A stretch of DNA of 64,000 nucleotides. Source: Malacoraja senta (lineage: Eukaryota). The position numbers and the translations under genes are program-made. The notes under the pieces are model-generated. The model was given only the letters and a program-made list of their open reading frames with translations. It did no database searches and was not told the DNA's origin. This document shows positions 24,524 to 49,992 of this stretch, one piece after another. Every line of letters begins with the position of its first letter. Positions within the stretch are counted from its first letter, which is position 1. Where the stretch lies: assembly GCA_038087875.1 (NCBI GenBank), contig CM075984.1, positions 41,354,001 through 41,418,000 of the forward strand, given 5' to 3'.

Positions 24524-24736
24524 TCAACTTGCAGAGTTTCCAAATGTGTTTGTTTCTACTGCCAGGTTGGGGTCTGCATTTTCTGAAGGGTTTTGCCCTT
24601 CATTTGCAATGTTCGTGGCCTGAAAGCCAACATCGTGTCCTGGCTCATTCAGTCCACTAAACTCCAGATTATGGATTTCCATATCCAATGCTGACAAAAT
24701 GTTCTGTGATGCATTTTTCTCAGAGAAGATTCTATC
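24524..24736 (-). CDS. PER2: PER2 last exon 23 (DRIFSEKNASQNILSALDMEIHNLEFSG...NSAS*)
   Basis: ttaatttag acceptor, phase 0 matching exon 22, 70 codons then TGA; positional similarity to human ECVYCENKEKGNI...EEDIPSLGLSEV. Confidence 0.78.
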   Translation of the reverse strand, partial: DRIFSEKNASQNILSALDMEIHNLEFSGLNEPGHDVGFQATNIANEGQNPSENADPNLAVETNTFGNSAS

Positions 24737-25574
24737 CTAAATTAAGAAGAATTACAATCAAATATATACACGACAAATTCCACACCTTCCATAAAAACAA
24801 AATCATTAAGAGTACAAGCAGTGTCATATATTATTTCCATTTTATTCTTACCATTACATTCTAATTTTTATGAGTCATAAGGAACAATCCCAAAATTAGT
24901 TGTCATTTTTTTTAATTATAGCCAACATTAGCCTCAAAAGGAATCACAATAAAACTTGCTGATTCTAAGTCTATATTCAGTTAAAACATGAAAGCCAATT
25001 GTCCATGTTAACATTTGATTTGTGGAAACAAAGAACTGCAGCTGCTGGTTTACCAAGGAATGACAGAACATACTGGAGTTACTCAGTGGGTCAGGCAGCA
25101 CCCCTAGAGAACGTGGATAGGTGACATTTCAGTCTGAAAAAGAGTCCCGATCCGACCCGAAACATCGCTTATCCAGGATGCTGACCGGAGTCTAACCTTA
25201 ATAATTAATTTTCTTGTCTGCCAAAAAGTTGCAGACCCGGCGGCTATTTATTTTACCAATTGTACAATACTGAACTAAATGCTGCAGGAAAGCTGTGAAT
25301 GAAAAGATTCAACAGGCAGACAATTATGTGTAGGAGAGAACTGCAGATGCTGGTTTAAATCTAAGGTAGACACAAAATGCTGGAGTAACTCCGCAGGTCA
25401 GGCAGCATCTCTGGAGAGAAGGAATGGGTGACGTTAAGGGTCAAGACCCTTCTTCAGACAATTATAATGGTTGCTTTGTAAAGTCCAATGCTTATTGGAA
25501 GTTATCACAGCTTTATTTGATCATCTCCCTACTCCCCAATTATATATATGTGCACTAAATGCATTTTCCAATTA

Positions 25575-26775
25575 TTATTATTTTTTTAAAATTTTTATTT
25601 ATTAGAAGTACATTACATTACAACCACATACATTAGTACTCATCATTTATATCTTCTTACAATTAATGTACTCCATTTATTTTTTACAGTAGAAAAGGAA
25701 AAGATTGAAAGAAAGAAGAAAGTGAAGGAAAAAGTGAAAGTGTAGGAAATGTGACAACAAAAAAGGACGAAGACCCTATAAGAGCAAAATTAAAAACAAA
25801 AGAAAAAGAGTTAAGAAATAGACCCTAGGAAAGAAAGAGAGAGAGAGAAAGAGGAAAAAGAGAGAAACAGATATTTTTATGAGCATTACGTAAATGGGAC
25901 ATACCAACTCTTCAACTATCATCCCCCCTTACCTGATAATTCTATAAATGCAGACCACGTCAGGTGGAAGTGATCTGGTTTACCTGCTAGGAGGAGTCTT
26001 ATCTCTTCTAGGTGTAATGTTTCAAACATATTTGAAATCCACATATTTATAGTTGGTATTGGAGCCTTCTTCCAAAATTTTAGAATTAGCTTTTTTCCAA
26101 TTATTAACCCATAGTCCATTAGTTTCTTTTGAAACACATTTAGTTCTGGACCATCTTCCGTTATACCGAAGATAATCCATTCTGCTTTGGGTATCAGTCT
26201 TGTTTTAAATAACTTTGTAAAGATTTCAAAAATTTCATTCCAAAATTTTTGAATTTTTGTACAGAAAACGAATGAGTGTGCTATAGTAGCTTCTTGGGAT
26301 TGACATTTATCACAAATAGATGATACATTTGGGAAAATTTTATGAATTTTAGTTTTTGAATAATATAATCTATGTAAAATTTTAAATTGTATTAAAGTGT
26401 GTCTTACATTAATCGAGCATTTATGCACGTTTAATATGTATTCATTCCAACTTTCCTTTGAAATTTTAATAGCTAACTCTTGTTCCCAGTCTCTTCTGAT
26501 ACCCTCCGTAGGTGGTATTTGTACATTTAAGATAATATTATACAAATATGATATTAAGTTTGCTGATTCCGCTTTTATCTGCATTGCCTCGTCCAATACA
26601 TCTACTGGGTTATTATCTTTTGTATTTTTTTCAAATAGTCGCATATTTGAAAATATTTAAAATATTGATTATTTCCGAGTTTATATTTTATTTGTAATTG
26701 TTGAAATGAAAGTAATTTTCCAGTTTCATACAAGTTTTCCAATTTTTCGAATTTTTATTTTGTTAATAAACAATT
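25575..26775 (-). mobile_element. L1/Tx1-type LINE 3' fragment (ORF2 C-terminus, 3'UTR, A-rich tail) in the last PER2 intron, sense to PER2
   Basis: ORF 25919-26644 has the zf-RVT signature IQFKILHRLYYS..CDKC..ATIAHSFVFC..FW; AATAAA and A-run on the minus strand at about 25581-25603. Confidence 0.85.
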
Positions 26776-27745
26776 ACATTAAATTGAGAGCCCAGTCCAC
26801 TCATGACAAAATTCCTAGTCCACATTTATTATTACCATTTAGTTTTCTTCAGTGATGTGTCACAAGGGGACAGGTCAAATTTGTCTTGGTATAAAAAGGT
26901 GTTTAGTTTTACTTGCATACCTATATGCTATAATAAATTATATAATAAATATAGAATGCTATAATAAATTCTGCACACTTTAAATTTTATGGCATTTCAA
27001 ACAAGAAGTTGGGAATTGATCCCAACTTGCTTTTAATGGGTGATTCACAAAGAGCACTGCAAAGTCTCGGATTCTTAAAATAACAGCTTGAGGATATTTA
27101 AATACAAAACAGATCAGAGTGCTGTCAGTTTTATTGCTCTTGCAGAGCAGGCTTGTTGTATTTTCTTTATGGATGAACCCCCCCCCCCCCCCCCCATCAC
27201 AATGGTAAATGTTGCACGCTGGTTTGGTTCAAATCTATGTTCAGACACTTCAGTTGAAATATTCATACTGTGGGCGATTTTTACTGCTTCATGGGTGTCA
27301 CATAAGCAGACCCAAACACAAATGTCGTGTTTGTAAGGAGGGTCTCAACCCGTAATGTCACCCATTCCTTCTCTCCAGAGATGCTGCCTAACCCGCTGAG
27401 TTACTCCAGCATTTTGTGTCTATCTTCGTATTTGTGAGTGTTCTACAATTTGTGTGGAACAAGACAATTTGTGTGTTTTACAAATGTGTGGGAGTAAATT
27501 AAAATGTTGGTGCAACGCGATTTAGGCAGCATCTAGAACTAATATTTTAGGCTATGAATCATTCATCACAACTTTTAAGAAGAGAGCTATTAGACCTTAA
27601 AGTGCAGAAGGGGAGAGGTGTGAAGCTTAAGGCAGAGAGGAGAGACTACGCACAATCGATCTGTGTTTGTGAAGCATCAAGACCTAAATTCTTGATAAAA
27701 CAACATTGACCTGAAACATAAAGCACAAATTTCTCTCTCCACAAG

Positions 27746-28026
27746 GGGCAGCACAATGGCGCAACGGCAGAACTGCTGCCTTACAGCGCCAGGGACTCAG
27801 GTTCGATCCCGACATCGGGTGCTATCTGTAAGAAGTTTGTAAGTTCTACCTGCGACCGTGTGATTTTTTTTTGCACATTCCAAGGCCGTGCTGGTTTGTA
27901 GGTTAATTGGCTTCTCCAAAATTGTCCCTATGTGTGTAGGATAGATCTAGTGTATGGGTGATCATTGGTCGGCACGGACTCGGTGGGACAAAGGGCCTGT
28001 TTCCACGGTGCATCTCTAAACTAAAC
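27746..28026 (+). mobile_element. HE1-like SINE
   Basis: tRNA head GGTTCGATCCC and CTCTAAACTAAAC tail. Confidence 0.8.
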
Positions 28027-28874
28027 TCTTAAGTTGAGTTTCCACAAATTTCTCTTTTTGCTCAGATTTCCAGCATTCATTCACACTGCACCACTTTTCC
28101 AAAAGTTTGGAAATGTTCAAATATATAAAACATTTTTCATGCTTTATATCACTCAAATAATTAGTTTCTACGATTGATGCATTTTACTTCATTTGGAATT
28201 TATTTGGAAGGAGGTAGGGGATATACATTAAATCCTGCCATTATTATTATGGGAAATTGCCTCAGTTTCAGAGTATGTGCTCCTATAAAAACTGTAGAAC
28301 CACCTGCTTAAGAAGCTTTTCATTTCTGAAATTTAATCCACGTCTGAGTGCAAATGAAGTATTATATTAAAACTTGGATAATATTAAAACTTGGGACAAT
28401 AATATAAATTGAGCGATTAGATCACAACTCAAATTGTCAAACAGAGTTCATACAGTTGAGAAAGCTAAAAAGGGGGTTCTGAAGAAGGGTCTCGACCCAA
28501 AACGTCCCCCTTTCCTTCTCTCCACAGATGCTGCCAGTCCCACGGAGTTACTCCAGCATTTTATGTCTATCTTAAACATAAAATAAGTTTGGAAACAACA
28601 ATACTCAATTGCAAAACATGGCCTTTAATTTAACCCCATTGTTGGCAGTCCAACACAGGGCAGACAAAGGCTGGTTTGTAGCAGAGCTATTAAAAATTCC
28701 CATGGTGCAGTCAATGATGTTCAAGAAATAGGATTTGCAATATATTGTTGAGCCATACAAGCAGCAGCTTTATCAGGTAATATGGAATGCATGTGATAAA
28801 AATGGGTGCAGATTTTATCATGAAAATATAATTCATTTCTCCTGCCAAGTTCAGGAAGTTAAAAATGGACTTAC

Positions 28875-29016
28875 CATGATGCCAATGGTTTTTTGTGCTG
28901 CACCCGTTTTAAAGACCTCAGCAATTTCTTTTCTTTGTTTCTCTGTGAATTTGGGTTGGTTTCTCTGCAACACTTTCAGCTTTACCCTGTCCTCCTTCAA
29001 AACTGTTACAATGTCC
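28875..29016 (-). CDS. PER2: PER2 exon 22, CRY-binding coiled region (RDIVTVLKEDRVKLKVLQRNQPKFTEKQRKEIAEVFKTGAAQKTIGIM)
   Basis: aatcag acceptor, gtaagt donor, 142 nt; VLKEDR..L..LQ..QP.FTE.Q..E Period_C motif. Confidence 0.93.
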
Positions 29017-31171
29017 CTGATTTGTAAGAAAGAAAGGCATGCTGATTATACTGCACTGGGAGATAATAAATATTATAAAAAAAACATCAGCAATACATGT
29101 GCTTGACATATGAATCTCAGCCATCTCTCTACAAAATGATTGGTATCAAGGTAAGGCAAAGTCACTCAGAACTAGAATTTCACTGCACAATCCATGCATG
29201 GTGGTTAATGCATTTTTCATTTTAATGACCGTGTAACCCATTTAAAACAATCAGTTAATGCTCCAGATAAAGTGAAGAATAAACCTGAAGAGAATTGGAA
29301 GCAGACGAACACATTAAATGTTCAAATACTGGAATCACACTTAAGCACATCTTAAATTCAGGATTGTTGCTTAGGGTTAGGAATCAGTTTAAGTCAAAAG
29401 GTTGAGGGTGATGGGTAATTAGAACTAGCGGCAAGCTAAAAGATGGGCACCAGAGCTTTGAGCAGCCCAGTTTAAAAAGAGTCGAGGGAAATGCTGTCCT
29501 GATGACATAGGAAAAGTTAATTTGTATGAGCGTTTCAGTAGCAGATGGACTGCTACTCGAGTAACGTAAAGAGTTGGAAACAGGAAGCCCACTGATGGCA
29601 CAGAGATACAAGGTCTCAGGATCAAATTCCAGATAAAATTGACCTTTTATGCAGCAGTGTTTCTATTTCATGGGCCAAAGACTGGGTTATTAACTTTAAT
29701 GGTTAATGTTGGCTGAAAAGTAGTGCAGAAATCAGACATACAGCTACAGTACATATAATTTATTATGAAATAGATAGTGCAGAATGATTCTCTTGTCTTT
29801 AGATTTCAGAGGGCTATGAATTATTTAATGTTATGCTGGATCTTTGTATTATCTGAAACCCAAAGATCAGATTACAGGTCTTGCAATTAGATTATTACCT
29901 TGTAAATACAATTGGGCATCTTTTACTCTTCGGACAAAATTGGACTCGGAGATTAAATTATTTAATCACTGCCAGGATTAGAAATCCCGTAAGGTCCCCC
30001 GACAGAATAGTGTTACTGACGCAAACCTTGAACCTTAAAATAATTAGTTGATCTCACCCAGGGCAAAGGCTGAAGCACCACAAACATGGAGAGGTCCTCG
30101 AGGGCAATGAAGTAGAACTTTCAAAATAGCTCAGAGATACATCCACTAATTGTCATTTGGTGAACTTGGCCTTGAGTGTGCATGTGGGATGAAAACTAGA
30201 CTCGACTTAGATTGGATGTCCTCCATGGTTGAACAAACTACCAGCCACCTACCAGCTAAACCACATGCCAGTGTGTAATAAGTTAATGTAATAAGAGAAC
30301 TGCTAGCAATCGAGGAGACGTACTACAGAAAGGAAAAGCACCTTCACCACAAGGGGAAAAGTGGAGATTGAATTAAAAATTCTATTGAAGTGCAACTCTG
30401 ATAACCTGCCATCTAATTCCTGGATTCACCAACATCATTGCTCACCAGGCCCAGACTCCCATGCTCTCTTTACTTTCAGATTCCCAATTCCCTTTTAAAA
30501 CTCACAGGGTTCACTGGAAAAATTATGCCACTATGTGACATCCAAAACAAGTGAAGTGTTTTGAGGTAATAATGAGAGTGATATCCAAAAGAAAAATCTC
30601 AATCTAGCACCAAGTTCCAACTGTGCTGTATTAACAAAGTTTTATTGTATTCGAAGCACTGCCCAGAAAACATGAACCAAGGCCATACTATAAATACGTT
30701 CTTTCTGGTCAGTGCAATTCCAATTCTCATACCCTCAAAATGAATACTTTTGAGTATTCTCCCTGTAGGTTTTCCCTGCATTAAACTAAACTTCTTGTTC
30801 TTCTTTCCTTTCTGCAGCCACGACTTTGTTGAACATGGGCCTTGGCGGGTCAGATGGCATCATTGATTGTCTGCCTGCCTATTATTGTATGGGCTTTACT
30901 TTTATTTCTGTGGAGTCAACAGGAATAGAAAGTGAGCTAACCATGTGGGACTAGCCCAGAAGCAAGCGATAACTGAAAACTCTCTCCATACAAATGATAT
31001 AAATATTTCTGCCAGTGGCTACCAATTGCTTCCCACCATGTCCTAGGATACACTTGGTCTGGTCCCGGGGATTTTTCTTCTTTTGTATGTATTAACACCA
31101 CAGGCACCTTCTCTTCTGTAATGCAGATCTCTCGAAGAGATCATTACTAACCTCTCTAGCATCTTTCCACC

Positions 31172-31893
31172 AGGGGCGCCAGGGCGATGGCTGCCCTGCC
31201 GGCAGTCTGTTCGTTTTTCCATTCTTTTTGTTATTTTTTAGTGTTTAAAGTTTGTTTGAATGTTCTTCGGTTTGTTTTATGTGGGGGAGGGGGGAGGGGA
31301 TCGGGTGATTTTTTTTTTCAAGTTCCTACCTTGCCGGAGATGTGGTTAATTTTCAGATCACATTCTCTGGCGTGTTCTGTGGCCTTCCATCGCTGGAGCT
31401 GGAAGCCTCCTCGGACTGTGAGCCCCACCGCAGGGCGCGGACTTAACATCGGAGCTGATCCCTTGCCTGGGATCGCTCCCACCGCAGACTTTACCATCAA
31501 GAGCTTGCAGTCGGGAGAGGCTGGTCGGGAGCTCCAACGTCACAGAAGGTTCGACCAACCCCGACGCGAAGTTCGATCGCCCAGCGCGGGGGAGCTGACA
31601 CCCCCCCCAATGCAGGAGCTGATCGCCTCGACGCAGAGGGCCCGAACGCCGCCGGCTACGGGAGTCAAGATCGTCCCGTCAACGGGGGCTCGAGGCCCAA
31701 GACCGAGGAAGAACTAAGGGAAGGGACTTGTATTTCGCCAATGAGGAATGTGTAGGAGTCACTGTGGTGGATGTTCATGTTAAAATGTGTTTTTGAGTGA
31801 TCTGTTGCTTTTAAGTGTATGACTGACCTGGCCAATGAAATTCCTCGTATGTTGCAAAACATACTTGGCGAATAAAGTGTGATTCTGATTCTA
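31172..31893 (+). mobile_element. Unclassified interspersed repeat with GC-rich body and AATAAA/(TGATTC)n tail; related copy at about 54510-55345
   Basis: Shared 5' GGGGCGCC..TGGCTGC, T-rich tract, TTATGTGG..GGGGG..GGGG and GC-rich body in both copies. Confidence 0.5.
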
Positions 31894-32079
31894 TGTCTTT
31901 CTACATTGTGAAGCCAAACAGCAAATATTCATTGAACACCTCACCCATTTCTTTGGTTCGATGCGTACATGACCTTATTGATCTTTAACCTCTCCCTAGG
32001 TACTCTTTCGCCTTAAGACAGAACAATATGGAGAGCCTTTGAAGTTGGAGTCAACACAATTGGGATTTTGGGCACTTAC

Positions 32080-32179
32080 CTGAATGGTAGTTGATAGGTC
32101 ATCATGGTTCTCGCGTCTATTTTTTCATTGTCAGAGTCGTTGCTTCCAAAATATTTGCTGCTGCTCAAGCAGCTACTAC
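32080..32179 (-). CDS. PER2: PER2 exon 21, shortened (GSSCLSSSKYFGSNDSDNEKIDARTMMTYQLPFR)
   Basis: attag acceptor, gtaagt donor, 100 nt with phases 1 and 2 correct; SKYFGS and MMTYQLP Period motifs. Confidence 0.92.
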
Positions 32180-32504
32180 CTAATCATGACAAACAAAGAA
32201 AAACAAAGGCAAGATAAGCATCTATTGCCTCCCCCAAATTGATCTGGAGAATTAGGCTCTCCACCTTTCACTTTATTTGGCTCTCCACTTGAGCCACCTT
32301 CTGGAACTGTTGCAGTCCTTCTGGTTTGGTTTATTTTGGAGATACAGCATGTTCACAGGCCCTTTGGCCCGAGTCCATGCCAAGCATTGATCACCCGTAC
32401 ATACTAGTTGCACGGTATTCCACTTCCCCATCCACTCCCTACATATTAGCTGCAAGTTTACAAAGGCCAGTTAACGTACAAGCCCACATGTCTTTGGTGA
32501 ATAT

Positions 32505-33228
32505 CAGGGTTTGTACACTTGGAACAGCTTTAAATTCGAGGACTTTAAGGACTTAAGGTCCAAAAATCCAATCTTCAAGGACCAAAATCCAGCAAACATT
32601 GATGGTTTATTGGAGACTTTTATATAAATTGCTTCGTATTGGATGATTTGATTCTGTACCAAATAAAAGTAAGAAAGAAGGTTGGTTGGTCTCCATCTCA
32701 AATTTGATTGAAAATCATGTTTTGCACACCTCTGGTACAAAAAGCACAGCAGAAAAATCAACTTTCAATTCAAAGTTCCTTCGAAGTCATGAATATAGCT
32801 CGAATTATTGCCAAATGCCTATTGGAATTTGGAGTTGAGACCTTGTTTTCTGTTGTGTTACTTGTGTGCTCTGATGTACAGACACTGATTTTCAGGGAAA
32901 TCTGAGAAGGTGATCAGTCAATCCATTAGTCCTGGTTGCAGAGAACGACACTAAACTACATAATAATTACACACAAGATGGTTAACCTATCTATATTCGT
33001 ACTTCAATAGAGCACTGATGGTCCATTTACTCATCTCTTGGTTGTTCAATCTGAAACCATAATGGAAAACTTTGTTTTTCAACGAGTCCCTGCAAACCTG
33101 TACTGTCCCTGCCTGCTTCAAAGTCTCCACTATTTCAATGACTTTCAAGGACCCATGATAAATCCAAGGACTTAAGGCCTTGAAAACAGATTCAAATTCC
33201 AGGACTTTCAAGGACCATACGAGCCTTG
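32505..33228. mobile_element. Degenerate non-autonomous DNA transposon (hAT-like ends) with subterminal AGGACTT(T/C)AAGG repeats
   Basis: CAGGGTTTGTAC at the left end, decayed ATACGAGCCTTG at the right end, repeated subterminal motifs at both ends. Confidence 0.4.
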
Positions 33229-33529
33229 GAAAATGCTTTGCCATCTCCAACCATTGCCAGAGTGTTGCCATGGTCGGAGATGTATTCTATTAAACAGGTT
33301 AACTCCTTCCAGAGCAATAGATGGTCTGATCTAATGTGCTGTTTATTTATTTTTGTCACCCAACCCCAAGCAAAAGCAACCCATCAGTTAACTTACACAA
33401 GCTCTTAAGCAAAGAAAACCATGGGCGACATGGATCTTTTGTTTAAAAAAAAAGAATAGATCCACTGATAATTCAGACAGTTGTTAGTGTTACATTATGG
33501 GTTAGGTTAAGACAAAAGGACAAAGTTAC

Positions 33530-33704
33530 CTGTGTCAGTTCCGGACATTCCACAACCATTGGACGGAGAGCCCGAGGAGCCGGACCTTGTCGATTCCATA
33601 CTCCCCGAGCCGGCAGAGCCGACGTCTGACTGCAATAACAGCTTCAGCATGTCAGTAGAAGTGGAGTGAGAGTCACTGTTCTGGGCTTCAGTAGGGGATT
33701 CATT
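33530..33704 (-). CDS. PER2: PER2 exon 20 (NESPTEAQNSDSHSTSTDMLKLLLQSDVGSAGSGS...)
   Basis: ctaaag acceptor, gtaact donor, 175 nt; QNSD..STS..LLxLLL and SG-rich tract. Confidence 0.92.
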
Positions 33705-34731
33705 CTTTAGAGAGCAAAAAAAAACCATACAATATGTTCACACCAGACAGGCAATATATTATTAATTAAAATGTCAAATTGCTGCATAGTGAATTAAAAG
33801 AATAAAAGAATTGCTACAGACATTTTGGACATGGTATACAGCACATGGCGTTACTGAGTAATGGGGTATCAGTCTTGTGTATCGTCAGGATAATGTAGGC
33901 TAACAATACTGTCTAGGAGACAATACGATGGACCACAAGTTAATGGCAAATGTCTAAACATTGTTGCTTATTCATCTTCTCACCATGAAAAAACAAAGTA
34001 CGGGGAAGGGGGGGGTTGGAGGAAGTGAATTAAAAAGGGTGCAACATATGCAATTTAAAAATAACGCAGGAAATTATAATGGAGAAGTATGGATGACATT
34101 TTTTTTTAAATGGGTCAATTTTAAATCCTTGTCCCATTTAAGAGTTTTTCCAGACACAATGTTTTCTCCCCACTTTATTCTGGGACAAAGAGCTTTAGAG
34201 ACTGGGCAATTGGCATCATGCGCCATTGCAGTCGATTGCTGACAGCCAGGGGATCAGTTGGTGTGAGTGGCATGGAAGTGTCAGGTCTATAGATTAGTGG
34301 TTGAATGTAGAGTCGTTGGAAGATGGCAATGGGGGATGGGTGCTAGAATTGAGGGAGTGAATTGGATCGGGAACAGGTAGGGGAGGGAATGAAAGGGTTA
34401 CAATGAAGGAGTGGGCAAGTTCAAATCTGTTTCCAGAACAGGACCTCACAGATTGGGAGTGGTCCCCTTGGCTAATGCTGAAGACCTCAGGAGTACGATG
34501 AATATCTTCTTCTAAACAAGCGCTCACATCTATGGGTGAGCAGGCGCACATCAAAATCCCCCTAGTAGAAGTGGCAGCCAGGCACAATTCATGCACAAAT
34601 GTATCAGATGCAGGGAGGGCCCAGAAGGAAAGCTCAGAGACTTTATTCTATTTACACTGTCCTCAATTTTCTCGATTTATTTTTCTCAGAAATTTAATCC
34701 AATTATTGTTTATAATTTGTACGCCACTTAC

Positions 34732-35426
34732 AAGATCTGCTTCGTCCTTTGCAATGGTGCCCACATTTGTACCGTTCATGTTGCTTGTCATTACTCTTCG
34801 GTCCGCCATTAATTCATTTCCAGCTACAAGTCCAATTGCTTTCGTAGATCCGGGCCCCACATCCAGAAGGTTCAGCTGCAAAGGTGAAATGGACCTAGAA
34901 TGGAAATTTGGAGGGGAAGTGTGGCCTTGTTGCCCTTGACTCCCTGGTGCAGGCTGGTCACGATACTGCGGTGCAAAGGCTGGCGGAGCCTTGAATAAAT
35001 TCCATGCAGGTAAAAAGTTTGGTTGCGAAGGGAATGGCGGCTTACTTGCAAAAATTGGCTGGTGCGCCGTCTCGGGTCCCGGAGACATGATGTAATTGGG
35101 CAACACAACTGCCACCAGCGGGGATACGAGTGGCGCGGAAAATGGTGGAGTCTGAGGATTGTAATGAAGAGCCTGAGCAGCAAAGTTGGCCAGAGATGGG
35201 TCAGCTGCAAAAGGCATGCCTCCAGGGGTTGGAAACATCGGCAGCTGGTAGGTAGGTATGAGTGCAGTAATTGGTGCGGGCCAAGGGTGGAGTCTATGAT
35301 TGGTTCTTCCGCTTGCCGCGCCATCAGATGATCCTTGCTGCTTGATGCGCTTCGTTTTAGGCTTCCTATTCTTCCCGCTTTTTTTGTGCCCGGGCTCTCC
35401 ACGGTTCCACGCAAATCCTCGAGAGG
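34732..35426 (-). CDS. PER2: PER2 exon 19: NLS (KKSGKNRKPKTKRIK), proline-rich region, SRSISPLQLNLL
   Basis: tttgtag acceptor, gtaagt donor, 695 nt, phase 1 to 0. Confidence 0.93.
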
Positions 35427-35869
35427 CTACAAAGGAAACAAATGGGACTTGTAAGTATTTGCTTCTAACCTTATTCTGGACATTTTTATATTGAAAGGTT
35501 GATGAAAGGAGTGACATAGATATTGGTCCCACAACTCCTGAAATTAACTGTTTAAAATTGAAGCTCAAACAAAGATTCTCCACAATTCAAACTTATTTTA
35601 GCAATCAGAGACAAGACATTGGCAGATCGTCCAAGAAGCAGTTTATAAAAGTTCCATGAAGGCAACTGGAATGACTATAACAGGCAAGGCTACATGAGAA
35701 TTTAACAAAACAAAAACAAAAACCATAGGATAATATGCTAAATTTAGCCCGAAATGAAACATGGTACATTGATCCTCAATTGCCTCTTCTCGTAGATAAT
35801 ATACAGCAACACATTTTGTATGCTTACAAGTAAAATTAATTTAAAAACCCCTTATTTGTAAAATCTTAC

Positions 35870-36136
35870 CACGATCCCTTGAATATTCTTTGTGCCGATA
35901 TTGCAAAGAGGATTTGCAAGTAGCTCCAAATGGTTTTAGTTTACTCAACTCCTTGAACTTGCTCAAAAATATCTGCTCTTCTTTCTGTGTATGAGCAGCT
36001 AGAACTTCTTTGGTGAGACCGAGTTTCTTGAATGCTTCCTTTTCCAGGTTCACAGAAGATGCTGTGGTGACCAGCGTAGCAGATGTCATGTTCTCTGCTG
36101 GATCTGCAATGCCAAGTCCATCCTCCAATAGGATTT
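35870..36136 (-). CDS. PER2: PER2 exon 18 with CK1-binding motif B (FKKLGLTKEVLAAHTQKEEQIFL)
   Basis: gacag acceptor, gtaaga donor, 267 nt. Confidence 0.96.
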
Positions 36137-37209
36137 CTGTCAAGATTTTAAGTTTAAAATTGTATGCGTAAGAGGGTGTTTTTTCTGCATGAAGGCAAGT
36201 GCATCAACTATAATGGCATAATAACTCCCCTAATGAGCAAGTGCTCCAGTTGGTCAGGCATGAGTTTGACCGTGGTAGCATTGCTGGAATTAGCAACCAC
36301 ACATCTGGGCATAGGAGTGGGGAAACAAATACACGTGTTGCGTGTACACACATAAGTAGCATTCAGAAACATTGTGGTATAGCCTGTGGAGCTAATATTG
36401 TTTCTTCAGAAGGGCACCTCAATTGGGAAATACAAATTACTTATGCCTCAAGAACTTACATTTTTTTAACCATAAATCACACTAAATAGCCATCACAGGG
36501 CTAAAATCACAGTAAGTTCTGTTCATTCACCATCTCGGTGCCTGATAATCTACATTGGAACCTGGCTCGCTAATAGTTCAAATTTAAAACTTTAGTTCTT
36601 CCACACAGTCTTTTCCACCTCTGTAGTCTCCTCTGGCATATTTTCCATAGTAATCCATGCTCCTCTAATTTTGGTGCTTCATTGCTCCATGTTGGAAGAC
36701 CATGTGTTCAGCTGCCAAGGCCCTAACCCATGGAACTAAAACTCTCCACCTCCATTCCAGTTTCCTAACTTAACATGTTCACAACATCTAGAAACAAGGA
36801 GCTGCAAATGCTGGTTTATACACAAAAGGACACAAAGTGCTGGAGTAACTCAGCATGTCTGCCTGACCTGCCGAGTTACTCCAGCACTCTGTGTCCTTCA
36901 CAAACTCTACCTTTTAGACAAAGCTTCTGAGCTATGGCCCTACCATCTCTTTATGTGGCCTACAATTAATGACATTTTAATCCTGTGAGATACTGCAAAA
37001 TGATTTTGCTACGTCAAGTGTGCTAAAAAAAAAAGTTGTGGGTGCTGTGAAATTATTAAATATCGCATTTATTGGTCACTAAAAATCAATATTCTTCTCC
37101 TTCCATGCTCAGGTCAGGACATTGAAGCTTCACAGAAATGCTTGCAGTGCGTGTATTAACCAACTTGCACCTCCTCTTGAGAGATCTTTTAGAACGTGAA
37201 TTTCAGTAC

Positions 37210-37368
37210 CTGCATCTGCCTGCGGTTTCTTGTCTCCCACATGAACAATGGTGCTGCTGTAACTTCCTCGACTGGTGACGCTCGCTGCCTTCCTTCGCAA
37301 GGCGCGTGGTGCCAGAAGTGTGCCAACAACTGCTCCAGAAGGCATCTTCTTTGCAGACTTTAATGGAG
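37210..37368 (-). CDS. PER2: PER2 exon 17, FASP region (ALRRKAASVTSRGSYSSTIVHVGDKKPQ)
   Basis: cttgtag acceptor, gtactg donor, 159 nt; SYSSTIVHVGDKKPQ is PER2-like. Confidence 0.95.
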
Positions 37369-37849
37369 CTACAAGGAAAGCAATTCCGCAGGTCAAATAC
37401 TCGCATTTATACTTTATCTCCGATGGATGACTTTGTGAAACATACCGAATTTGGCTTTCGATAAACACTCAGTGGTTACTAAATGACTAAGATATGTTGG
37501 GCAAAAAAATATATATATATATACAAAACTAAATAATGGAAATATTTAATAAATCAGGCAGCATTCTTGGAGATAGAAACAGAGTTAATTTTTCAGATCT
37601 TGATCAGAACTGGAATAATAATTGTTTCTTTCTTCAGAGATGCTGCGTGACATTCTGTGACCTCCAACATTTTGTTTCTAGCATCTGGGTTTGTTTTTAA
37701 AGCAATAAAGATAGGCTAATAAGCCTCAGAAACCTCATGGCACCATACAGATTAAATCTTTGAATCAAGTCAGACGTTCCGTACATTCTGTAGCTTGGTA
37801 GGTAATTTGAAACAAAACTAAACACCTCAATTTCAGACTTGGTAAATAC

Positions 37850-37956
37850 CTTTACAATCATTCACGATATCAACTTTTCGTTTGTCGTCATCCGATGGCG
37901 ATGAAGAACCACACTTCCGTTTTGTAGTCCACGGAATATTGTAGCTATCCAGATAT
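37850..37956 (-). CDS. PER2: PER2 exon 16 (RYLDSYNIPWTTKRKCGSSSPSDDDKRKV...)
   Basis: tttgcag acceptor, gtattt donor, 107 nt; RYLxS..KRKC motif. Confidence 0.9.
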
Positions 37957-38587
37957 CTGCAAAAATACCAAAGTAACAAAAATCAACGAGGTAACAGAAA
38001 AGAGAGAAACAGACTCATTCGACATATTATTTAATCATTTTTCTCTCAACTTTAAAGCAGTATTCTGGTGTATCTAAAAAGGGCACAAGACAAAAGTGTG
38101 TATGTGCGTTTTAAACAGTGATGAAGCAAATATTTTCTGATCTTACAAGTCAAAAGGGTCAATGTGGCTCAATGGTGCCGTCTCGCCCGACTCAGCAGGC
38201 CATCAGGCTAACTTCTGAACATAGTTGATGCTTCAGTGTGGCATTGAAAGTGTGCCACACTGTCGAACGTGACTTGTTTCAGGTAAAGCAATAAACCTTG
38301 GATGTAAAAGATGCCGTGCATTTTTTACACTGAAATAGCAGAGGATATCCAAATCTATATACCTGCCACCTTCACATGAGCAAAAGGATTGATACATTTG
38401 CCGAAAAGTCAACTACCATGATTCAAAGGAGGCTCAATATGTGTATGTTTCAACTTTTACGTCGCATGCTACAATATTTAAGCTGATTAAAACTTGTGTT
38501 TTATTTTAAACTTTCTTGTTTGAGCTCTGGGTACTCAGCCTGCTGGTTGCCATTACTATTGCTGAGCCCAAGATTTCTACTGGAGCT

Positions 38588-38845
38588 GGTTTTAGTTTTA
38601 AGATGCAGCACGGCAACAGGCCCTTCGGGCCACCGAGTCCAAACTGACCAGTGATCACTCATACCCTCGTTCTATCCTGCACACAAGGGGGGGAATTTAC
38701 AGAAGCCAATTAATCTGCAAACTCGCACGTCTTTGGAATGTGGGAGGAAACCGGAGCACCCGGAGAGAACCCATGTCGTGTCAGGCAGAACGTCCAAACT
38801 CCATGCAGACGGTACCCAAGGTCAGGATCGATCCAGGTCACTGGG
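38588..38845 (-). mobile_element. Diverged HE1-like SINE
   Basis: V-domain GTCTTTGGAATGTGGGAGGAAACCGGAGCACCCGGAG on the plus strand. Confidence 0.7.
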
Positions 38846-39042
38846 GCTGGCTGGTGTCAGTTAGCAACCTATGTTAGGAAAGATGAAATGTACTTCACAG
38901 AGATCCAAGTATCTCTGTGGCTGCTTTCTTAAAGGCCATTCATGAGAGTTGTCACTTCACAACTGATGATAAAATCCAGGTCAACAAATAAAGCCTTGTA
39001 GTTTTGGTAAATACATTTGTTCAGGTCCAGAATGCCACTCAC

Positions 39043-39208
39043 CTTATTACACTATCCAGACAATTGATTTGCTGATAGCAATATCCAGCATGTTCCTCAC
39101 ATCTTGGTTCATCCACGAGCATGTTCTTTCCAGCACTACTTGTTCCAGTACCCTTGGATGGGCTGGCTTTAACATCTTTAGTCTGTTTACTTGTCTCTTT
39201 TTGTGTTC
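39043..39208 (-). CDS. PER2: PER2 exon 15 with CK1-binding motif A (YQQINCLDSVIR)
   Basis: tttgcag acceptor, gtgagt donor, 166 nt. Confidence 0.93.
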
Positions 39209-39702
39209 CTGCAAAATATATGCCCTTCTACAATGAGAACAATGCGTAAAATTCTGAAGTAAGGAGAGATCAAGTCTTTTGTTAGTTTTCCCTTAATTTA
39301 AAAAAAAAACAGGTCATATTTATTTAAATTGGCTTTTCAAATACTTCAGTCAAAATGAAGCTAGATGTATTATAGCCAGACTCCCTTCGTCTTATTCTTA
39401 TCTGGTTCTCAAAAATGGTAGGAACTGAATATTGAAAAAGTATACATATTCAAGTAAAATTGTAGTCCCAAAGTATTTAAAGGCAAATAGCAACATGTTT
39501 ACATTGTTCCTTACATTGATGTTTTCTATGTAAATCCAAATGACTACATCAGGTCCATATTCACAGAATAAGAGTGAATGAAACAAGCACAGCTGTAATG
39601 GCAAATGTCATTCTTGGACTCATGGTGCTTTTCACTCAGAATTTGTTTAAATCATTTACGTATATGCCTAGATAATGACTGCAAAATAATTAAGTCTATT
39701 AC

Positions 39703-39805
39703 CAGTTCTGTGTCTGCACTTTGATTCACTCTTTATTTTGTTGAATTCTGTCTGTCCTCGAATTCTTCCTGTGTGGGGATCTTTACCAGCTTTCCAAACC
39801 ACCAT
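39703..39805 (-). CDS. PER2: PER2 exon 14, poorly conserved linker (MVVWKAGKDPHTGRIRGQTEFNKIKSESKCRHRT)
   Basis: ctttctttcag acceptor, gtaata donor, 103 nt; supplies the needed phase 0 to 1 bridge. Confidence 0.75.
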
Positions 39806-40180
39806 CTGAAAGAAAGAGACAAGGGACTAAAGGTTAATGATTTCCTCCCAAAATTAATGACTGCTCAAGAGCAGACTCTGCTTTTGAGTCACAAAAAAAC
39901 TAGATAGTGAATTCAGGATGTACTAGGCCAACTGCTGAATGAACTAATGATGGCAGAAAATTGTTAAAGCAGTATTTTCAACTGCATTCAAAGAGTAAAT
40001 GAAAATATTATTAACTCCAGTGCTCCATTTTCTATATGGGAGCTGACAAACTTGTTTCGGTGGTATCATTAGAGTCTCAAAGCCAAATGTTCTCAAAACC
40101 AAGTGCCACCCTTTAACGTAATCTAAAACAACATTTCCATACATTAGTAAGGGAGAGCTTCACAGTCAAAAGACACCTTC

Positions 40181-40225
40181 CCATGGGCATTTAAATTGAG
40201 CCCATCTCAATTTAAATGCCCATGG
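40181..40225. repeat. Perfect 20-bp inverted repeat with 5-nt loop
   Basis: CCATGGGCATTTAAATTGAG-CCCAT-CTCAATTTAAATGCCCATGG. Confidence 0.95.
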
Positions 40226-41052
40226 AAAGGCAAAACTATGTCTCTTGGCAAACGATTCCTTGCATTTTTCAAAGAATAACACAGGTGCCCAGCCATTTTT
40301 TGGCTCAGTCAACATCACTAAACTAGATTATTTCCATATGTTTCTCACTGCCACTTTTGTGCAAAGCTAACTGCTATCTTCTCCTACAATACACTTTTCC
40401 TGCAATACATCACGTTAAAAATAATTTAATTGATTTCAAAGTAATTCGGAATATCTGGAGATCACCAAAAGGCGCTATACAAATGCAAATCCTTTAGAGA
40501 GTCACTATGACTCACGATCAGACATCTTTGTAATTCTTAAGAGTTTTACAAAGAGCAAATATTTATTTGTCTACAAAGCTATATTCATTTAATTGGCTCT
40601 TTCTACTTGTTTTAAGAGCAACAATTTCAGGCTTATCGATGGACAACATCACCTACATGTTATTGTCTGATTATAAGCATTAATTAATAATCATTAAAGA
40701 TCAATAAAGAAATAAATGTAATTCCTACTGAACAAATACGAAATGAATACAAAGCCCCACGATACTGCAGTTTGGAGAATTGAAATTACAAATTTAAGGA
40801 CCGTATATCCTAACTAAACTAAAATAGAGACCCATAAAATCTGGGATACAGAATAAAAATTACTCTAACGAGATTTATATGCAATAAAAATAAACGCACA
40901 ATTTTTTTTCAACTTGCATTTCTGATGTCTGCGTAGATGCAGCCTCGCATTAAGCTGCGATACCAAACATTTCTAGGAGCATAACCCCTGATTTATGCAT
41001 GATAATCAACATATTTGTTTGCATGAATTAGCTTGTGGAAGAGATGACTTAC

Positions 41053-41184
41053 AGGTTTGTGCAGTTGTCTCTCTTCATTGATGTTGCCATTAGTATCAAT
41101 GGAAGAGGCAACACTGATGATCTGTGCATGGGATCTACTACTGACCAAACTTCCATACCCACTGGAACGATTATTGTAAACAGG
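41053..41184 (-). CDS. PER2: PER2 exon 13 with beta-TrCP phosphodegron SSGYGS (41149-41166)
   Basis: ttttag acceptor, gtaagt donor, 132 nt; PVYNNRSSGYGSLVSSRSH. Confidence 0.94.
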
Positions 41185-41287
41185 CTAAAATAAGAAAGCA
41201 TAACTGTCTTAATAGAATTTAAAGCACTGAATTAGACACAAATTGCATTTAAATCTGAAAACACTCATCAATGTGAATTAGTTTTAC

Positions 41288-41396
41288 CTGCAGCAAGAGC
41301 TGTTGAATCTGCTCAGTGATGGTCTGTATTTCAGGATGAAATGCCTTCAATTCACTACAGCCCGGAGCAGCAAACACATCTTCATTCAAAGGACCT
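41288..41396 (-). CDS. PER2: PER2 exon 12 (GPLNEDVFAA...ITEQIQQLLLQ, NES)
   Basis: atgtag acceptor, gtaaaa donor, 109 nt. Confidence 0.95.
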
Positions 41397-41902
41397 CTAC
41401 ATATCAGAAGTTGAAGGGGAGATACAAGACTGAGTACCCATTTTACATCTGTCATCATTTAATATATGTGATTATGAATATGTACAATTTCAAAGATTAT
41501 GTTGCTATGGCCCATTATTTGACAGGCAAATATTCATAATAATAGTTCCAATTTTGTTTTTTGAATACTAGGGCAGTAACTGCAGTCAGATCGACTGGAT
41601 TCACAAAATAATCACTTCATAATTTCAGTCCCTATCATCACCCTGATTAATTAAAAGTATTTAAAATAATTCATAATTTTAGGATACATTTTTTTCCTCT
41701 ACATTAACACCCTTAGTTCTGCACATCCTTGCTACATCTTTTTTCTTTAAACAATCCCTGTTCACCTCTCAGTTAAAAATGATATTAAAAAGACACTGAA
41801 ATAATACCACAACATCAAATCAGTAACTGCTAGATACAATTCTAATTTGTTGCAAAATGTCTAAATTGATCAATCTTCATGATAATAATCCAAAGCACTT
41901 AC

Positions 41903-42056
41903 CTTCGGACTTTGTGTCTTCCGATAATGAAGGATACTTTTCTGCTCCAGGGATTGACAAAACTGGACCAACTGGTGTCAATTGTGATGTATTCACCACT
42001 TTGTGTGCAGAAACGGACTGGTGAATGTTCAAAAGGTTGCCCAGCATTTTTCAGTA
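41903..42056 (-). CDS. PER2: PER2 exon 11, PAS-B/PAC ([30 protein letters not shown])
   Basis: ctttcag acceptor, gtaagt donor, 154 nt; dimerisation Trp of PWSRK is intact. Confidence 0.97.
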
Positions 42057-42230
42057 CTGAAAGAATAAAAAATAATCAAGTAGCAGTTATCTATGTCTGA
42101 AGAAAGTTCCCAATCTGAAACATCACCCATCCTTTTTCTCTAGAGATGTTACCCGACCCACTGTTATCCATGCTGGAAAAAATGACCATCAGATAATAAT
42201 AATAATTAAATATTGCATCTACAAACTTAC

Positions 42231-42337
42231 TTTTTTTATGAATGCTTAGCATGAGAGGTTGATCATCAGGGTGTAGATGCATCATTACAGGCATTCCTAT
42301 GAGATCCTGAGGCAAATAACCTAATAGAGGAACAGCC
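42231..42337 (-). CDS. PER2: PER2 exon 10, PAS-B ([36 protein letters not shown])
   Basis: tcacag acceptor, gtaagt donor, 107 nt. Confidence 0.97.
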
Positions 42338-42680
42338 CTGTGAAAGAAAATGGAATGATTCAATAATTTGCACAATGCAATTTACAATAAGATATTAAAA
42401 ACGCATTGAGTCAAATACAAGGCTGTTTTAAAAATAAAGTTAAACAAAAAAAAACAGAACTATTACCCAAAACGTACTAACTGAAGCATTTAACTGAATT
42501 TAGGTAAATATCATTTGCCCTGTAGGGGGTGAAACCTAGCTTTTAAAACAATTTTGTTCATGTTTCAAGAATGGTAATTTTATTTGGAATTTAATTTTAC
42601 ACAAGGTTTAATACAATTTAGATTAAAAACAAATTGTTTCTTTCCGCCATTGCTGCGAAAATACTTAGTTCTCCACATAC

Positions 42681-42759
42681 CTCTCTTCAATGTCCTGAAA
42701 CACACAGCTGGGTGAGTGAGTGGTGGTAAACACCCTCTTATCATGGGGAATCTTTGGCG
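42681..42759 (-). CDS. PER2: PER2 exon 9 (APKIPHDKRVFTTTHSPSCVFQDIEE)
   Basis: tatcag acceptor, gtatgt donor, 79 nt. Confidence 0.95.
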
Positions 42760-43487
42760 CTGATAAAACATAAAACAAAATGAAACAATTTTAAAAATGT
42801 GCTGTCTAATCAAATTTTCCCTTTTAATCGGTTAAATTAGCCTTGGATCTTTCCAATGGCATCTATTAAGTTAAAAACTTCAAAGCATAATGCTCAGTCT
42901 GCTAATTCTCACACTCAATGTAGTCAACTACAAACGGTGTGCTATGCTTTGAACCAGGTCATACAGCTTCTTAGAATTTCAATATATTAATAACTATCAA
43001 TTTGGTTTTACATATAAATGCACAAGAACTGCAAATGCTGGTTATTACACAAAAGTACACAAAGTGCTGGAGCAACTCGGCAGGTCAGGTAGCATCTCTG
43101 GAGAACATGGATAGTTGACTTTTCGGGAGAAGGGTCTCAACCCAGGACGTCACCTTTCCATGTTCTCCACAGATGCTGCCTGACCTGCCGAGTTGCTCCA
43201 GTACTTTGTGTACGTTAGCTTCTAACAAATATCGTACTCTGAAGAGTACATGCAGTCAGCCTGGCATTAGGGGGCTGTCCAGGCTGCCTTTAAATTAAAA
43301 ATAAGTTCTAATCACTCATTATCTGACTCGTTCTTCCAGTTTTCCAGCTAGCCAGAAAAAATTGGTTGAATTTGGTTGAAGGATGTTACATCATTTAATA
43401 ACAAATATGATTTTGCAGATTTGGGGTGAGGAGAAAACACAATGAGTGTTTCCTTGCGAAAGATAATTTTGTTGATCATAATCTCAC

Positions 43488-43630
43488 CTTCATATCCCGA
43501 ATGCACCCTTTCAGCAAGCATCAGGCAGCATAGTTGGTCATCGTCATCATCAGATGCCCGAACCTTTGTAAGATAAGGCGTCACATGAAACGGATAGTAA
43601 TGGGTGCTCCGATCTCGCTGTTGGTTTCCA
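43488..43630 (-). CDS. PER2: PER2 exon 8, end of PAS-A (YYPFHVTPYLTKV...LCCLMLAERVHSGYE)
   Basis: tcacag acceptor, gtgaga donor, 143 nt. Confidence 0.96.
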
Positions 43631-45207: not shown

Positions 45208-45259
45208 CTAATCCGACAGAAGAAGGACTTCTCCTGCATACAATCGAAAGGGGATGAAC
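45208..45259 (-). CDS. PER2: PER2 exon 7 (SSPFDCMQEKSFFCRI)
   Basis: ctttcag acceptor, gtgagt donor, 52 nt. Confidence 0.93.

Positions 45260-49952: not shown

Positions 49953-49954
<2 letters not shown>

Positions 49955-49989: not shown

Positions 49990-49992
<3 letters not shown>

What the first reader, a model, noticed from the sequence alone, without database searches (positions are those of the whole stretch)
32080..32179. About 31 codons deleted inside exon 21, removing the QDPIWLL motif
Seen: the exon is 100 nt and runs SKYFGSNDSDNEK directly into IDARTMMTYQLPF (junction near 32120), with good splice sites and correct phases. From recalled human PER2, the orthologous stretch is 63 codons and includes HFIKCVLQDPIWLLMA between these anchors; here it is 32 codons. 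Both anchors lie in one contiguous exon, so the missing part cannot be a separate exon that I overlooked. QDPIW marks the start of the CRY-binding domain in vertebrate PER proteins.
Basis: partly seen in the sequence, partly recalled or inferred. Interest (0 to 1): 0.85.

Follow-up and report, generated by a model that had tools for sequence, protein, structure and literature searches.

The report
Skate PER2 lacks its cryptochrome-docking helix
This is the clock gene PER2 of a skate, and a real in-frame deletion shared by all sampled skates has removed the short tryptophan helix with which PER proteins from lamprey to human dock beside a regulatory pocket of their partner cryptochrome, giving a natural test of what that contact is for.

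Summary
Exon 32080-32179 on the minus strand is 100 nt. It has consensus splice sites and reads SSKYFGSNDSDNEKIDARTMMTYQLPF. No QDPIW-like motif occurs in any frame of the window.

The gene is PER2 by phylogeny, sister to Amblyraja radiata PER2.

The missing stretch is 30 codons, not 31, and it was lost in two steps:
- 33 nt are missing in all batoids (rays and skates).
- A further 57 nt are missing, with identical ends, in every skate sequence examined. These are the window, the Amblyraja and Rhinoraja genomes, and an intronless RNA-seq contig. A second RNA-derived skate protein has the same short form.

This rules out an assembly collapse or a private mutation. The short exon is also derived, not ancestral. 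Among 359 full-length PER1/2/3 proteins, only skate PER2 lacks the tryptophan.

On mouse PER2 the loss covers about residues 1115-1144. That is the whole alpha1 helix, including Trp1139, which docks next to cryptochrome's serine loop.

My inference is that skate PER2 keeps the C-terminal clamp on CRY but has lost the serine-loop contact. In this species the remaining domain shows further erosion.

An earlier follow-up of this scan, on another piece of the same genome, reached the same reading.

I could not retrieve skate PER1, PER3 or CRY.

The parts
32080..32179 (-). PER2 coding exon 20 (exon 21 if the non-coding first exon is counted). It is 100 nt and encodes ..SSKYFGSNDSDNEK|IDARTMMTYQLPF. 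This is the shortened start of the CRY-binding domain.
   Evidence: sequence, splice sites, frame. (colinear tblastn with skate PER2). (DNA alignment with the 100-nt exon of other skates, 157 nt in Narcine, 190 nt in Heptranchias). The exon ends match the spliced RNA contig L001.
32116..32119 (-). Junction of the skate-specific 57-nt (19-codon) deletion. The deletion removed the codons for GQSNKYMRQDPIWLEMANA, as still present in rays. The breakpoint is ambiguous by a shared AG.
   Evidence: Alignment A1: the gap has identical ends in the window, Amblyraja L002, Rhinoraja L003 and RNA contig L001, and is absent in Narcine L004 and Heptranchias L005.
32132..32133 (-). Junction of the older 33-nt (11-codon) loss shared by all batoids. 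It lies in the poorly conserved linker (shark ..SENDHKSKIR..).
   Evidence: Alignments A1 and A2: the gap is shared by 4 rays and 5 skate sequences and is absent in sharks, chimaera, bony vertebrates and lamprey.
28875..29016 (-). Next exon, which holds the remaining core of the CRY-binding domain (RDIVTVLKEDRVKLKVLQRNQPKF...KTIGIM). It matches Pfam Period_C. It carries changes private to this species: loss of 3 codons (PWF in other skates), Asp-to-Gly at the mouse D1206 position, and Glu-to-Val at the mouse E1169 position.
   Evidence: sequence. (PF12114, E=2e-11, profile positions 117-155). (comparison with other skates).
24524..24736 (-). Last coding exon with the stop codon. It begins DRIFSE where bony vertebrates have the zinc-ligand motif CxxCE.
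   Evidence: sequence. (comparison: sharks LVCWE/LVCCE, rays NIFGE/KIFCE/KIFFE, skates RIFPE/KIFSA).
33530..33704 (-). Preceding coding exon (NESPTEAQ...GTDTG). It joins exon 32179-32080 in phase 1.
24524..59057 (-). Whole PER2 coding region: ATG at 59057, stop at 24526-24524, 22 coding exons, no frame break seen.
   Evidence: all segments of three batoid PER2 proteins found in order. (tree).

Best explanation
Shown: this is the single-copy-type PER2 orthologue of a skate (order Rajiformes). A fixed, ancient, in-frame 57-bp deletion arose on the skate stem, on top of a 33-bp contraction that arose on the batoid stem. Together they removed the entire alpha1 helix of the CRY-binding domain, the QDPIWLLMAN motif. 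This corresponds to mouse PER2 residues about 1115-1144 and includes Trp1139. The gene is otherwise intact and, in close relatives, transcribed. Inferred: in mammals this helix is buried in the cleft beside CRY's secondary pocket, where it reshapes the 'serine loop' that tunes CRY binding to CLOCK:BMAL1. The C-terminal half of the domain (alpha3 LKLL, Asp1167, Asp1206) clamps CRY's C-terminal helix and is the part whose mutation abolishes binding. Skate PER2 keeps that C-terminal half, with LK[VL][ML] and Asp1167 present. It therefore most likely still binds CRY and still competes with FBXL3 there. It would do so without the serine-loop/secondary-pocket contact and without the zinc clasp, which elasmobranch PER2 had already lost. 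That would mean a weaker or differently regulated PER2-CRY complex. In the species of this window the remaining domain has eroded further, which suggests that constraint on PER2-CRY coupling is relaxed here.
For: Sequence and frame. No motif anywhere in the window. PER2 orthology and skate placement: tree, (PER2 clade 100/100, batoids 100/100, skates 100/100, sister to Amblyraja 100/100). The nearest database proteins are named PER2 of rays and skates. The short form is shared by Amblyraja radiata (XP_032886980.1), Rhinoraja longicauda, and two Logan RNA-seq-derived proteins, one from a 4029-nt intronless contig. DNA alignment shows the identical 57-nt gap in all skates and a 33-nt gap in all batoids. 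The protein alignment agrees. Rarity: of 359 full-length PER1/2/3 proteins, only the 4 skate PER2 lack a Trp within 25 residues upstream of MMTYQ. The YFGS-to-MMTYQ spacing is 12 in skates, 31 in rays and 35-49 in the other 351. Mapping to mouse numbering uses 4U8H_B = residues 1095-1215. Roles: alpha1 and Trp1139 are buried next to the serine loop, binding is lost only on mutating the C-terminal half, and CxxC forms the zinc clasp (PMC4157330). CRY2 S64 bonds to PER2 residues 1135/1136, and the CBD remodels the serine loop to raise the affinity of CRY2 for CLOCK:BMAL1 (PMC7064333). Remaining domain: dN/dS is 0.15-0.22 for skates versus Narcine. Pfam Period_C scores fall stepwise: platypus 287, shark 212, ray 154, skates 103-114 bits, and the match splits at profile position about 104 in skates. 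Extra erosion on the window's own branch: 8 unique residue changes in 69 codons of the remaining domain against 25 in 1158 elsewhere (p=0.0003), while sister skates show 2 and 1.
Against: No binding or clock data exist for any skate protein, so the functional part is inference from mouse and human structures. Within skates, dN/dS of the remaining domain is no lower than the gene average (0.45 versus 0.48 for Amblyraja-Rhinoraja; 0.74 versus 0.45 for window-Amblyraja). The counts are small, about 12 non-synonymous and 4-7 synonymous differences. The clamp may therefore also be under weakened constraint. The window species has lost the Asp equivalent to D1206 and three residues at the HPW position, which argues against a fully working clamp here. 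Skate PER1, PER3 and CRY could not be retrieved, so compensation or co-evolution is untested. The raw reads of this assembly were not examined.
Confidence: 0.7

Rival explanations
1. CRY-uncoupled PER2. In skates, or at least in this species, the C-terminal domain no longer binds cryptochrome. The residual conservation would serve another partner or none, and PER2 would act in the clock independently of direct CRY contact.
For: Three separate interface elements are gone or damaged here. The alpha1 helix is gone. Both zinc-ligand cysteines are gone. In this species there is also the D1206-equivalent Asp-to-Gly change, the E1169-equivalent Glu-to-Val change and a 3-residue loss. Residue changes on the window's branch are enriched in the remaining domain (p=0.0003). 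Mouse knock-ins of the zinc ligands alone already shorten the period and reduce robustness (PMC11645128).
Against: In mouse, single changes, including D1206A (KD 69 nM against 35 nM for wild type, PMC13649712) and loss of CxxC (PMC4157330), weaken binding but do not abolish it. Only mutation of the alpha3 region abolished it, and that region (LKVL, Asp1167) is kept here. The remaining domain stayed recognisably conserved across more than one skate family.
Confidence: 0.2
2. Functionally neutral trimming. The alpha1 contact adds little, or PER1/PER3 supply it, so its loss in PER2 has no consequence for the skate clock.
For: Alanine scanning of single stretches of the mouse domain did not disrupt binding (PMC4157330). 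Rays already show decay of the helix flanks (FIKYVL replaced by SNKYMR; D-to-N in stingrays) before the deletion. This suggests constraint had already dropped.
Against: The motif and its Trp are otherwise kept in every one of 355 non-skate PER1/2/3 proteins sampled, from lamprey to mammals. Such conservation is hard to square with a dispensable contact. Skate PER1 and PER3 were not found, so compensation is unsupported.
Confidence: 0.08
3. Artefact: an assembly collapse, a mis-joined exon, or an unseen alternative exon or isoform that carries the motif.
For: None was found. The reads of this assembly were not inspected.
Against: The same 57-nt gap with identical ends is present in two other skate genome assemblies and in a spliced RNA contig, and a second RNA-derived skate protein has the same short form. 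Both anchors lie in one exon with consensus splice sites. No relic of the piece exists in three skate loci.
Confidence: 0.02

Closest known systems
Mammalian PER2 CRY-binding domain (mouse 1095-1215 / 1132-1252; PDB 4U8H, 4CT0, 6OF7)
   Same: It is the orthologous gene and domain. The KYFGS anchor, MMTYQLP, VLKEDxxKLK (alpha3), QPKF and the TIDx stretch are all recognisable. Exon 22 hits Pfam Period_C.
   Different: It lacks the whole alpha1 helix with Trp1139 (about residues 1115-1144) and both zinc-ligand cysteines (C1210, C1213). The window species also lacks the HPW-position residues and the Asp of the IDVT motif.
PER2 of rays (Narcine, Pristis, Hemitrygon, Hypanus)
   Same: Same batoid clade. 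They share the 11-codon linker loss and the loss of the CxxC pair.
   Different: Rays keep Q[DN]PIWL and a 157-nt exon. Skates have 19 fewer codons.
PER2 of other skates (Amblyraja radiata XP_032886980.1; Rhinoraja longicauda XP_078266149.1; two RNA-seq assemblies)
   Same: Identical 100-nt exon and the same deletion ends. About 91% protein identity to Amblyraja.
   Different: Other skates keep the [FS]PWF residues and the Asp of TIDIM. The window has 8 private substitutions in the remaining domain.
Engineered and natural PER-CRY interface variants in mammals (zinc-ligand knock-in mice; reindeer-specific PER2 substitution)
   Same: These are changes at the PER2-CRY interface that leave the gene intact. 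In mice they shorten the period and reduce robustness (PMC11645128).
   Different: Those are point substitutions in the C-terminal half. Here a 30-residue block that includes a whole helix is missing, together with the zinc ligands, and it is fixed across an order of fishes.

Membership tests
Vertebrate PER2 (period circadian protein homolog 2) | Groups with PER2, not PER1 or PER3, in a family tree | tested here: met
   IQ-TREE on 27 PER proteins. The PER2 clade has 100/100 support and the window sits inside chondrichthyan, batoid and skate PER2, sister to Amblyraja (all 100/100).
Vertebrate PER2 (period circadian protein homolog 2) | Full PER architecture (bHLH-like, PAS-A, PAS-B, CK1-binding middle, Period_C) in an open frame | tested here: met
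   All segments of three batoid PER2 proteins map colinearly to 22 exons without a frame break. The nearest proteins carry PF23170, PF21353, PF14598, PF08447 and PF12114. Exon 22 hits PF12114.
Vertebrate PER2 (period circadian protein homolog 2) | Neighbourhood: a HES-family gene next to PER2 (HES6-PER2 in human, from my own knowledge) | tested here: inconclusive
   A Hairy_orange ORF ending in WRPW lies at 2215-2721(+), downstream and convergent. Which HES paralogue it is was not determined.
PER CRY-binding domain as defined by the PER2-CRY crystal structures | N-terminal alpha1 helix with the buried Trp (QDPIWLLMAN) | tested here: not met
   Absent from the exon and from all six frames of the window. 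It is absent in all skate PER2 and present in the other 355 PER proteins sampled.
PER CRY-binding domain as defined by the PER2-CRY crystal structures | C-terminal clamp: alpha3 hydrophobic LKLL, Asp1167 and Asp1206 | tested here: inconclusive
   LKVL and the Asp1167 equivalent are present. The Asp1206 equivalent is Gly in the window but Asp in other skates. Binding itself cannot be tested here.
PER CRY-binding domain as defined by the PER2-CRY crystal structures | CxxC pair forming the intermolecular zinc finger with CRY | tested here: not met
   The window has RIFS at these positions. The first Cys is absent in all chondrichthyan PER2 sampled, and both are absent in skates.
Pfam PF12114 Period_C | Match above the gathering score over the whole profile | tested here: met
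   Skate C-termini score 103-114 bits (cut-off 25), but the match splits into two stretches, the best covering profile 104-169 only. Ray, shark and platypus match 1-169 or 3-171 in one stretch, with 154, 212 and 287 bits.

The most novel reading that the evidence does not exclude
Skates, and this species most of all, run a vertebrate circadian oscillator in which PER2 no longer engages cryptochrome's secondary-pocket/serine-loop region or the zinc clasp. PER2-CRY coupling would then be largely or wholly lost or rewired. This would be a natural 'CRY-uncoupled PER2' kept intact for tens of millions of years. It would show which parts of the PER-CRY interface the vertebrate clock can dispense with.
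Probability: 0.25. Interest if true: 0.75.

Novelty: new variant of a known kind. Interest (0 to 1): 0.55.

Why it matters
The QDPIWLLMAN helix and its tryptophan are conserved in PER1, PER2 and PER3 from lamprey to human. Structural work assigns this helix the contact that reshapes cryptochrome's serine loop and so tunes how tightly CRY holds CLOCK:BMAL1. A whole order of fishes has lived without it, and without the zinc clasp, in an otherwise intact and expressed PER2. That is a ready-made natural deletion series: shark (full helix), ray (shortened), skate (helix gone), this species (clamp also eroding). The series can separate the roles of the N-terminal contact, the zinc finger and the C-terminal clamp in PER-CRY function. 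The short proteins are already in public databases as automatic annotations. I found no paper describing the deletion in the searchable library.

Tried and rejected
1. I first translated the plus strand and got only stops. The gene is on the minus strand.

2. I looked for the lost motif elsewhere, as an overlooked exon or an intronic relic. Regular-expression scans of six frames, and relaxed tblastn and blastn-short with ray, shark, chimaera and coelacanth versions, gave only chance hits. One weak hit was conserved among skates. It is an out-of-frame reading of the FASP exon near 37305-37349 and has no meaning.

3. I tried to find skate or any chondrichthyan PER1 and PER3, to ask whether paralogues keep the helix. 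Searches with coelacanth PER1 and reedfish (Erpetoichthys) PER3 listed only bony vertebrates in their top 120. This is uninformative, not evidence of absence. The cluster look-ups of representatives likewise gave no chondrichthyan PER1 or PER3.

4. Genomic DNA could not be fetched for Pristis (no exact record) or Hemitrygon (file too large). Narcine served as the ray reference instead.

5. Literature searches for elasmobranch clock proteins or for Trp1139 mutants found nothing specific.

6. I did not predict the structure of the isolated domain.

7. Formal branch models (codeml, RELAX) were not available. I used pairwise Nei-Gojobori estimates and parsimony counts instead. These rest on small numbers.

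Full report
WHAT IS THERE. The finding lies on the minus strand. Read 5'->3', the stretch 32179->32080 follows a pyrimidine-rich tract and an AG acceptor, and it ends at CAG|gtaagt. In the frame set by the flanking exons it reads SSCLSSSKYFGSNDSDNEKIDARTMMTYQLPF, with one and two bases shared with the neighbouring codons. The exon before it is 33704-33530 and the exon after it is 29016-28875. Both join in frame. tblastn with three batoid PER2 proteins recovers 22 colinear coding exons, from the ATG at 59057 to the stop at 24526-24524, without a frame break. No DP[IVLM]W or QDP.W motif exists in any of the six frames of the 64 kb window.

WHICH GENE AND WHOSE. An exhaustive profile search with the PAS-A exon returned PER proteins. 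The closest representative is stingray PER2. A second search from it listed PER2 of rays, sharks and skates as the best hits, followed by coelacanth PER2. A maximum-likelihood tree of 27 PER1, PER2, PER3 and lamprey PER proteins places the window's product inside PER2 (100/100). Within PER2 it falls in batoids (100/100) and skates (100/100), sister to Amblyraja radiata PER2 with about 91% identity. The organism is therefore a skate of the order Rajiformes. It is close to Amblyraja but not the same species.

IS THE DELETION REAL, AND HOW OLD IS IT. I measured the spacing between the YFGS and MMTYQ anchors:
- It is 42-45 residues in coelacanth, gar, bichir, caecilian and platypus.
- It is 42 in the chimaera Callorhinchus.
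- It is 41-42 in ten shark PER2 sequences.
- It is 31 in four rays (Narcine, Pristis, Hemitrygon, Hypanus).
- It is 12 in the window and in four other skate sequences: the Amblyraja radiata genome annotation, Rhinoraja longicauda, and two proteins from RNA-seq assemblies.

One of the RNA-derived proteins comes from a 4029-nt contig with an uninterrupted 1239-codon ORF, so it is a spliced transcript. Its sequence runs straight from the preceding exon into this exon and on into the next, at exactly the boundaries predicted for the window.

I fetched the genomic loci of Amblyraja, Rhinoraja, the electric ray Narcine and the sevengill shark Heptranchias and aligned the exon with its intron edges. 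The exon is 100 nt in all skates, 157 nt in Narcine and 190 nt in Heptranchias, and the splice sites are conserved. A 57-nt gap with identical ends is shared by the window, both skate genomes and the skate transcript. A separate 33-nt gap is shared by all batoids.

The 30 missing codons are therefore the sum of two events. The first is an 11-codon loss in a poorly conserved linker on the batoid stem. The second is a 19-codon loss on the skate stem, which took out GQSNKYMRQDPIWLEMANA as rays still have it. The skates sampled include Amblyraja and the more distant Rhinoraja. From my own knowledge these represent two families, Rajidae and Arhynchobatidae. The deletion therefore predates the split between them.

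An assembly collapse or an overlooked exon is excluded for practical purposes. No relic of the piece is detectable in any of three skate loci.

HOW UNUSUAL IS IT. The session's searches retrieved 359 PER1, PER2 and PER3 proteins of at least 900 residues that carry the MMTYQ-type anchor. They range from lamprey to mammals. Only the four skate PER2 lack a tryptophan in the 25 residues upstream. The anchor spacing is 12 in skates, 31 in rays and 35-49 in the other 351. Pfam's Period_C profile tells the same stepwise story. Platypus scores 287 bits, shark 212 and ray 154, each in one stretch over the whole profile. Skates score 103-114 bits, split in two, with the main match starting only at profile position about 104.

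WHAT THE LOST PIECE DOES IN KNOWN PER2. The crystallised mouse fragment 4U8H_B spans residues 1095-1215, which fixes the numbering. The skate loss corresponds to about His1115-Asn1144, and this includes Gln1135-Asp1136-Pro-Ile-Trp1139.

Nangle et al. (PMC4157330) report several points:
- This highly conserved N-terminal end is embedded in a V-shaped cleft between the two lobes of CRY2 and buries Trp1139.
- One wall of that cleft is the 'serine loop' that borders the secondary pocket needed for CLOCK:BMAL1 binding.
- PER2 binding forces the loop into a distinct conformation.
- No single alanine-scan block abolished binding. Only changes in the C-terminal half did (alpha3 residues 1171-1174, and the region clamping the CRY C-terminal helix with salt bridges from Asp1167 and Asp1206).
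- Cys1210 and Cys1213 form an intermolecular zinc finger that strengthens the complex.

Fribourgh et al. (PMC7064333) show hydrogen bonds from CRY2 Ser64 to PER2 residues 1135/1136. They also show that the domain remodels the CRY2 serine loop and so raises its affinity for the CLOCK:BMAL1 PAS core.

WHAT REMAINS IN SKATES. The C-terminal half is still recognisable: MMTYQLP.RD, VLKEDxxKLK with LK[VL][ML] at 1171-1174, Asp1167, QPKF and TIDIM. Against the ray Narcine, its dN/dS is 0.15-0.22, close to the ray-shark value of 0.20. Within skates the estimates are higher. Amblyraja-Rhinoraja gives 0.45, about the gene average. These rest on about a dozen substitutions, so partial relaxation can be neither shown nor excluded.

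The zinc ligands were lost earlier. The first cysteine is absent in chimaera and all elasmobranch PER2 sampled. Sharks have LVCWE or LVCCE, rays have NIFGE, KIFCE or KIFFE, and skates have RIFPE or KIFSA.

THIS SPECIES GOES FURTHER. Using Rhinoraja as outgroup, the window's own branch carries 8 private residue changes in the 69 aligned codons of the remaining domain. It carries 25 in the other 1158 codons (Fisher p=0.0003). The two sister skate sequences have 2 and 1 such changes in the domain. The private changes include Gly for the Asp1206 equivalent. That Asp belongs to the IDVT motif, which in mouse also binds WDR5 (PMC13649712). They also include Val for the Glu1169 equivalent. In addition, three codons (PWF in other skates, HPW in mouse) are missing.

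MOST LIKELY MECHANISM. Shown: a fixed in-frame loss of the alpha1 helix in an intact and, in close relatives, transcribed PER2. Inferred: skate PER2 still docks on the C-terminal helix of CRY. It would therefore still compete with FBXL3 there. It cannot insert beside the secondary pocket, cannot shape the serine loop and has no zinc clasp. Mouse zinc-ligand knock-ins show a shorter period, lower robustness and a shorter PER half-life without gross loss of binding (PMC11645128). By analogy I expect a weaker or differently regulated PER2-CRY complex rather than none.

The main rival is that binding is lost altogether, at least in this species, where the clamp is also eroding. I give it about 0.2. 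A neutral loss gets about 0.08 and an artefact about 0.02.

COMPARISON WITH WHAT IS KNOWN, AND NOVELTY. The gene is an ordinary member of PER2 by tree and architecture. It fails two defining features of the crystallographic CRY-binding domain, the Trp helix and the CxxC pair. The short proteins are already in public databases as automatic predictions. Four literature searches found no description of the deletion or of elasmobranch PER-CRY interfaces. The one comparative paper that mentions cartilaginous fishes only counts gene copies (PMC11457068). I class it as a new variant of a known kind. An earlier follow-up of this scan, on another piece of the same genome, reached the same stepwise-erosion reading. 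My analysis was done before I read it, and the two agree.

LIMITS. I found no skate PER1, PER3 or CRY sequences. No reads of this assembly were examined. No formal branch models were run. All functional statements are extrapolated from mammalian structures and mutants.

Noticed in passing
window 28875-29016 (-): Private to this species, against four other skate sequences. Three codons are missing (other skates ..EV[SF]PWFKTG.., here ..EVFKTG..). The Asp1206 equivalent is Gly (TIDIM becomes TIGIM, hitting the IDVT/WDR5-binding Asp). The Glu1169 equivalent is Val. There are 8 private substitutions in 69 codons of the remaining CRY-binding domain against 25 in 1158 elsewhere (p=0.0003).
   Followed up: partly
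window 24719-24736 (-); P0003, P0138-P0147, P0001, P0135-P0137: The 'strictly conserved' PER2 CxxC zinc-ligand pair is not conserved in cartilaginous fishes. The first Cys is absent in chimaera and in all sharks, rays and skates sampled. Some sharks keep adjacent CC, and skates have no Cys at either position.
   Followed up: partly
window 2215-2721 (+): Last exon of a HES-family gene (Pfam Hairy_orange, E=1e-14, ending in WRPW). It is convergent with PER2, about 22 kb downstream of the PER2 stop. This is consistent with a HES-PER neighbourhood. The paralogue was not identified.
   Followed up: partly
window 56906-56995 (-): A 30-codon open stretch in the PER2 intron after the first coding exon. 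It matches residues 76-105 of stingray PER2 isoform X1 at 83% identity. The skate PER2 proteins in the databases lack this segment, so it may be a conserved alternative exon.
   Followed up: no
window 19875-22700 (+) and 25922-26656 (-): Long ORFs that look retrotransposon-derived. One has a reverse-transcriptase-like stretch with YMDD. A 245-codon ORF lies inside the last PER2 intron. They look like LINE-type insertions.
   Followed up: no
window 62400-63650: A low-complexity, microsatellite-like block (CA/GA-rich, open in several frames) lies upstream of the PER2 5' region.
   Followed up: no
whole PER2 CDS, window versus L001/L002: Whole-gene dN/dS is higher for the window against Amblyraja or the RNA contig (0.45 and 0.33) than between those two (0.23). 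The window has 33 private residue changes against 16 and 19, while its private synonymous changes are not elevated (12 against 11 and 29).
   Followed up: partly
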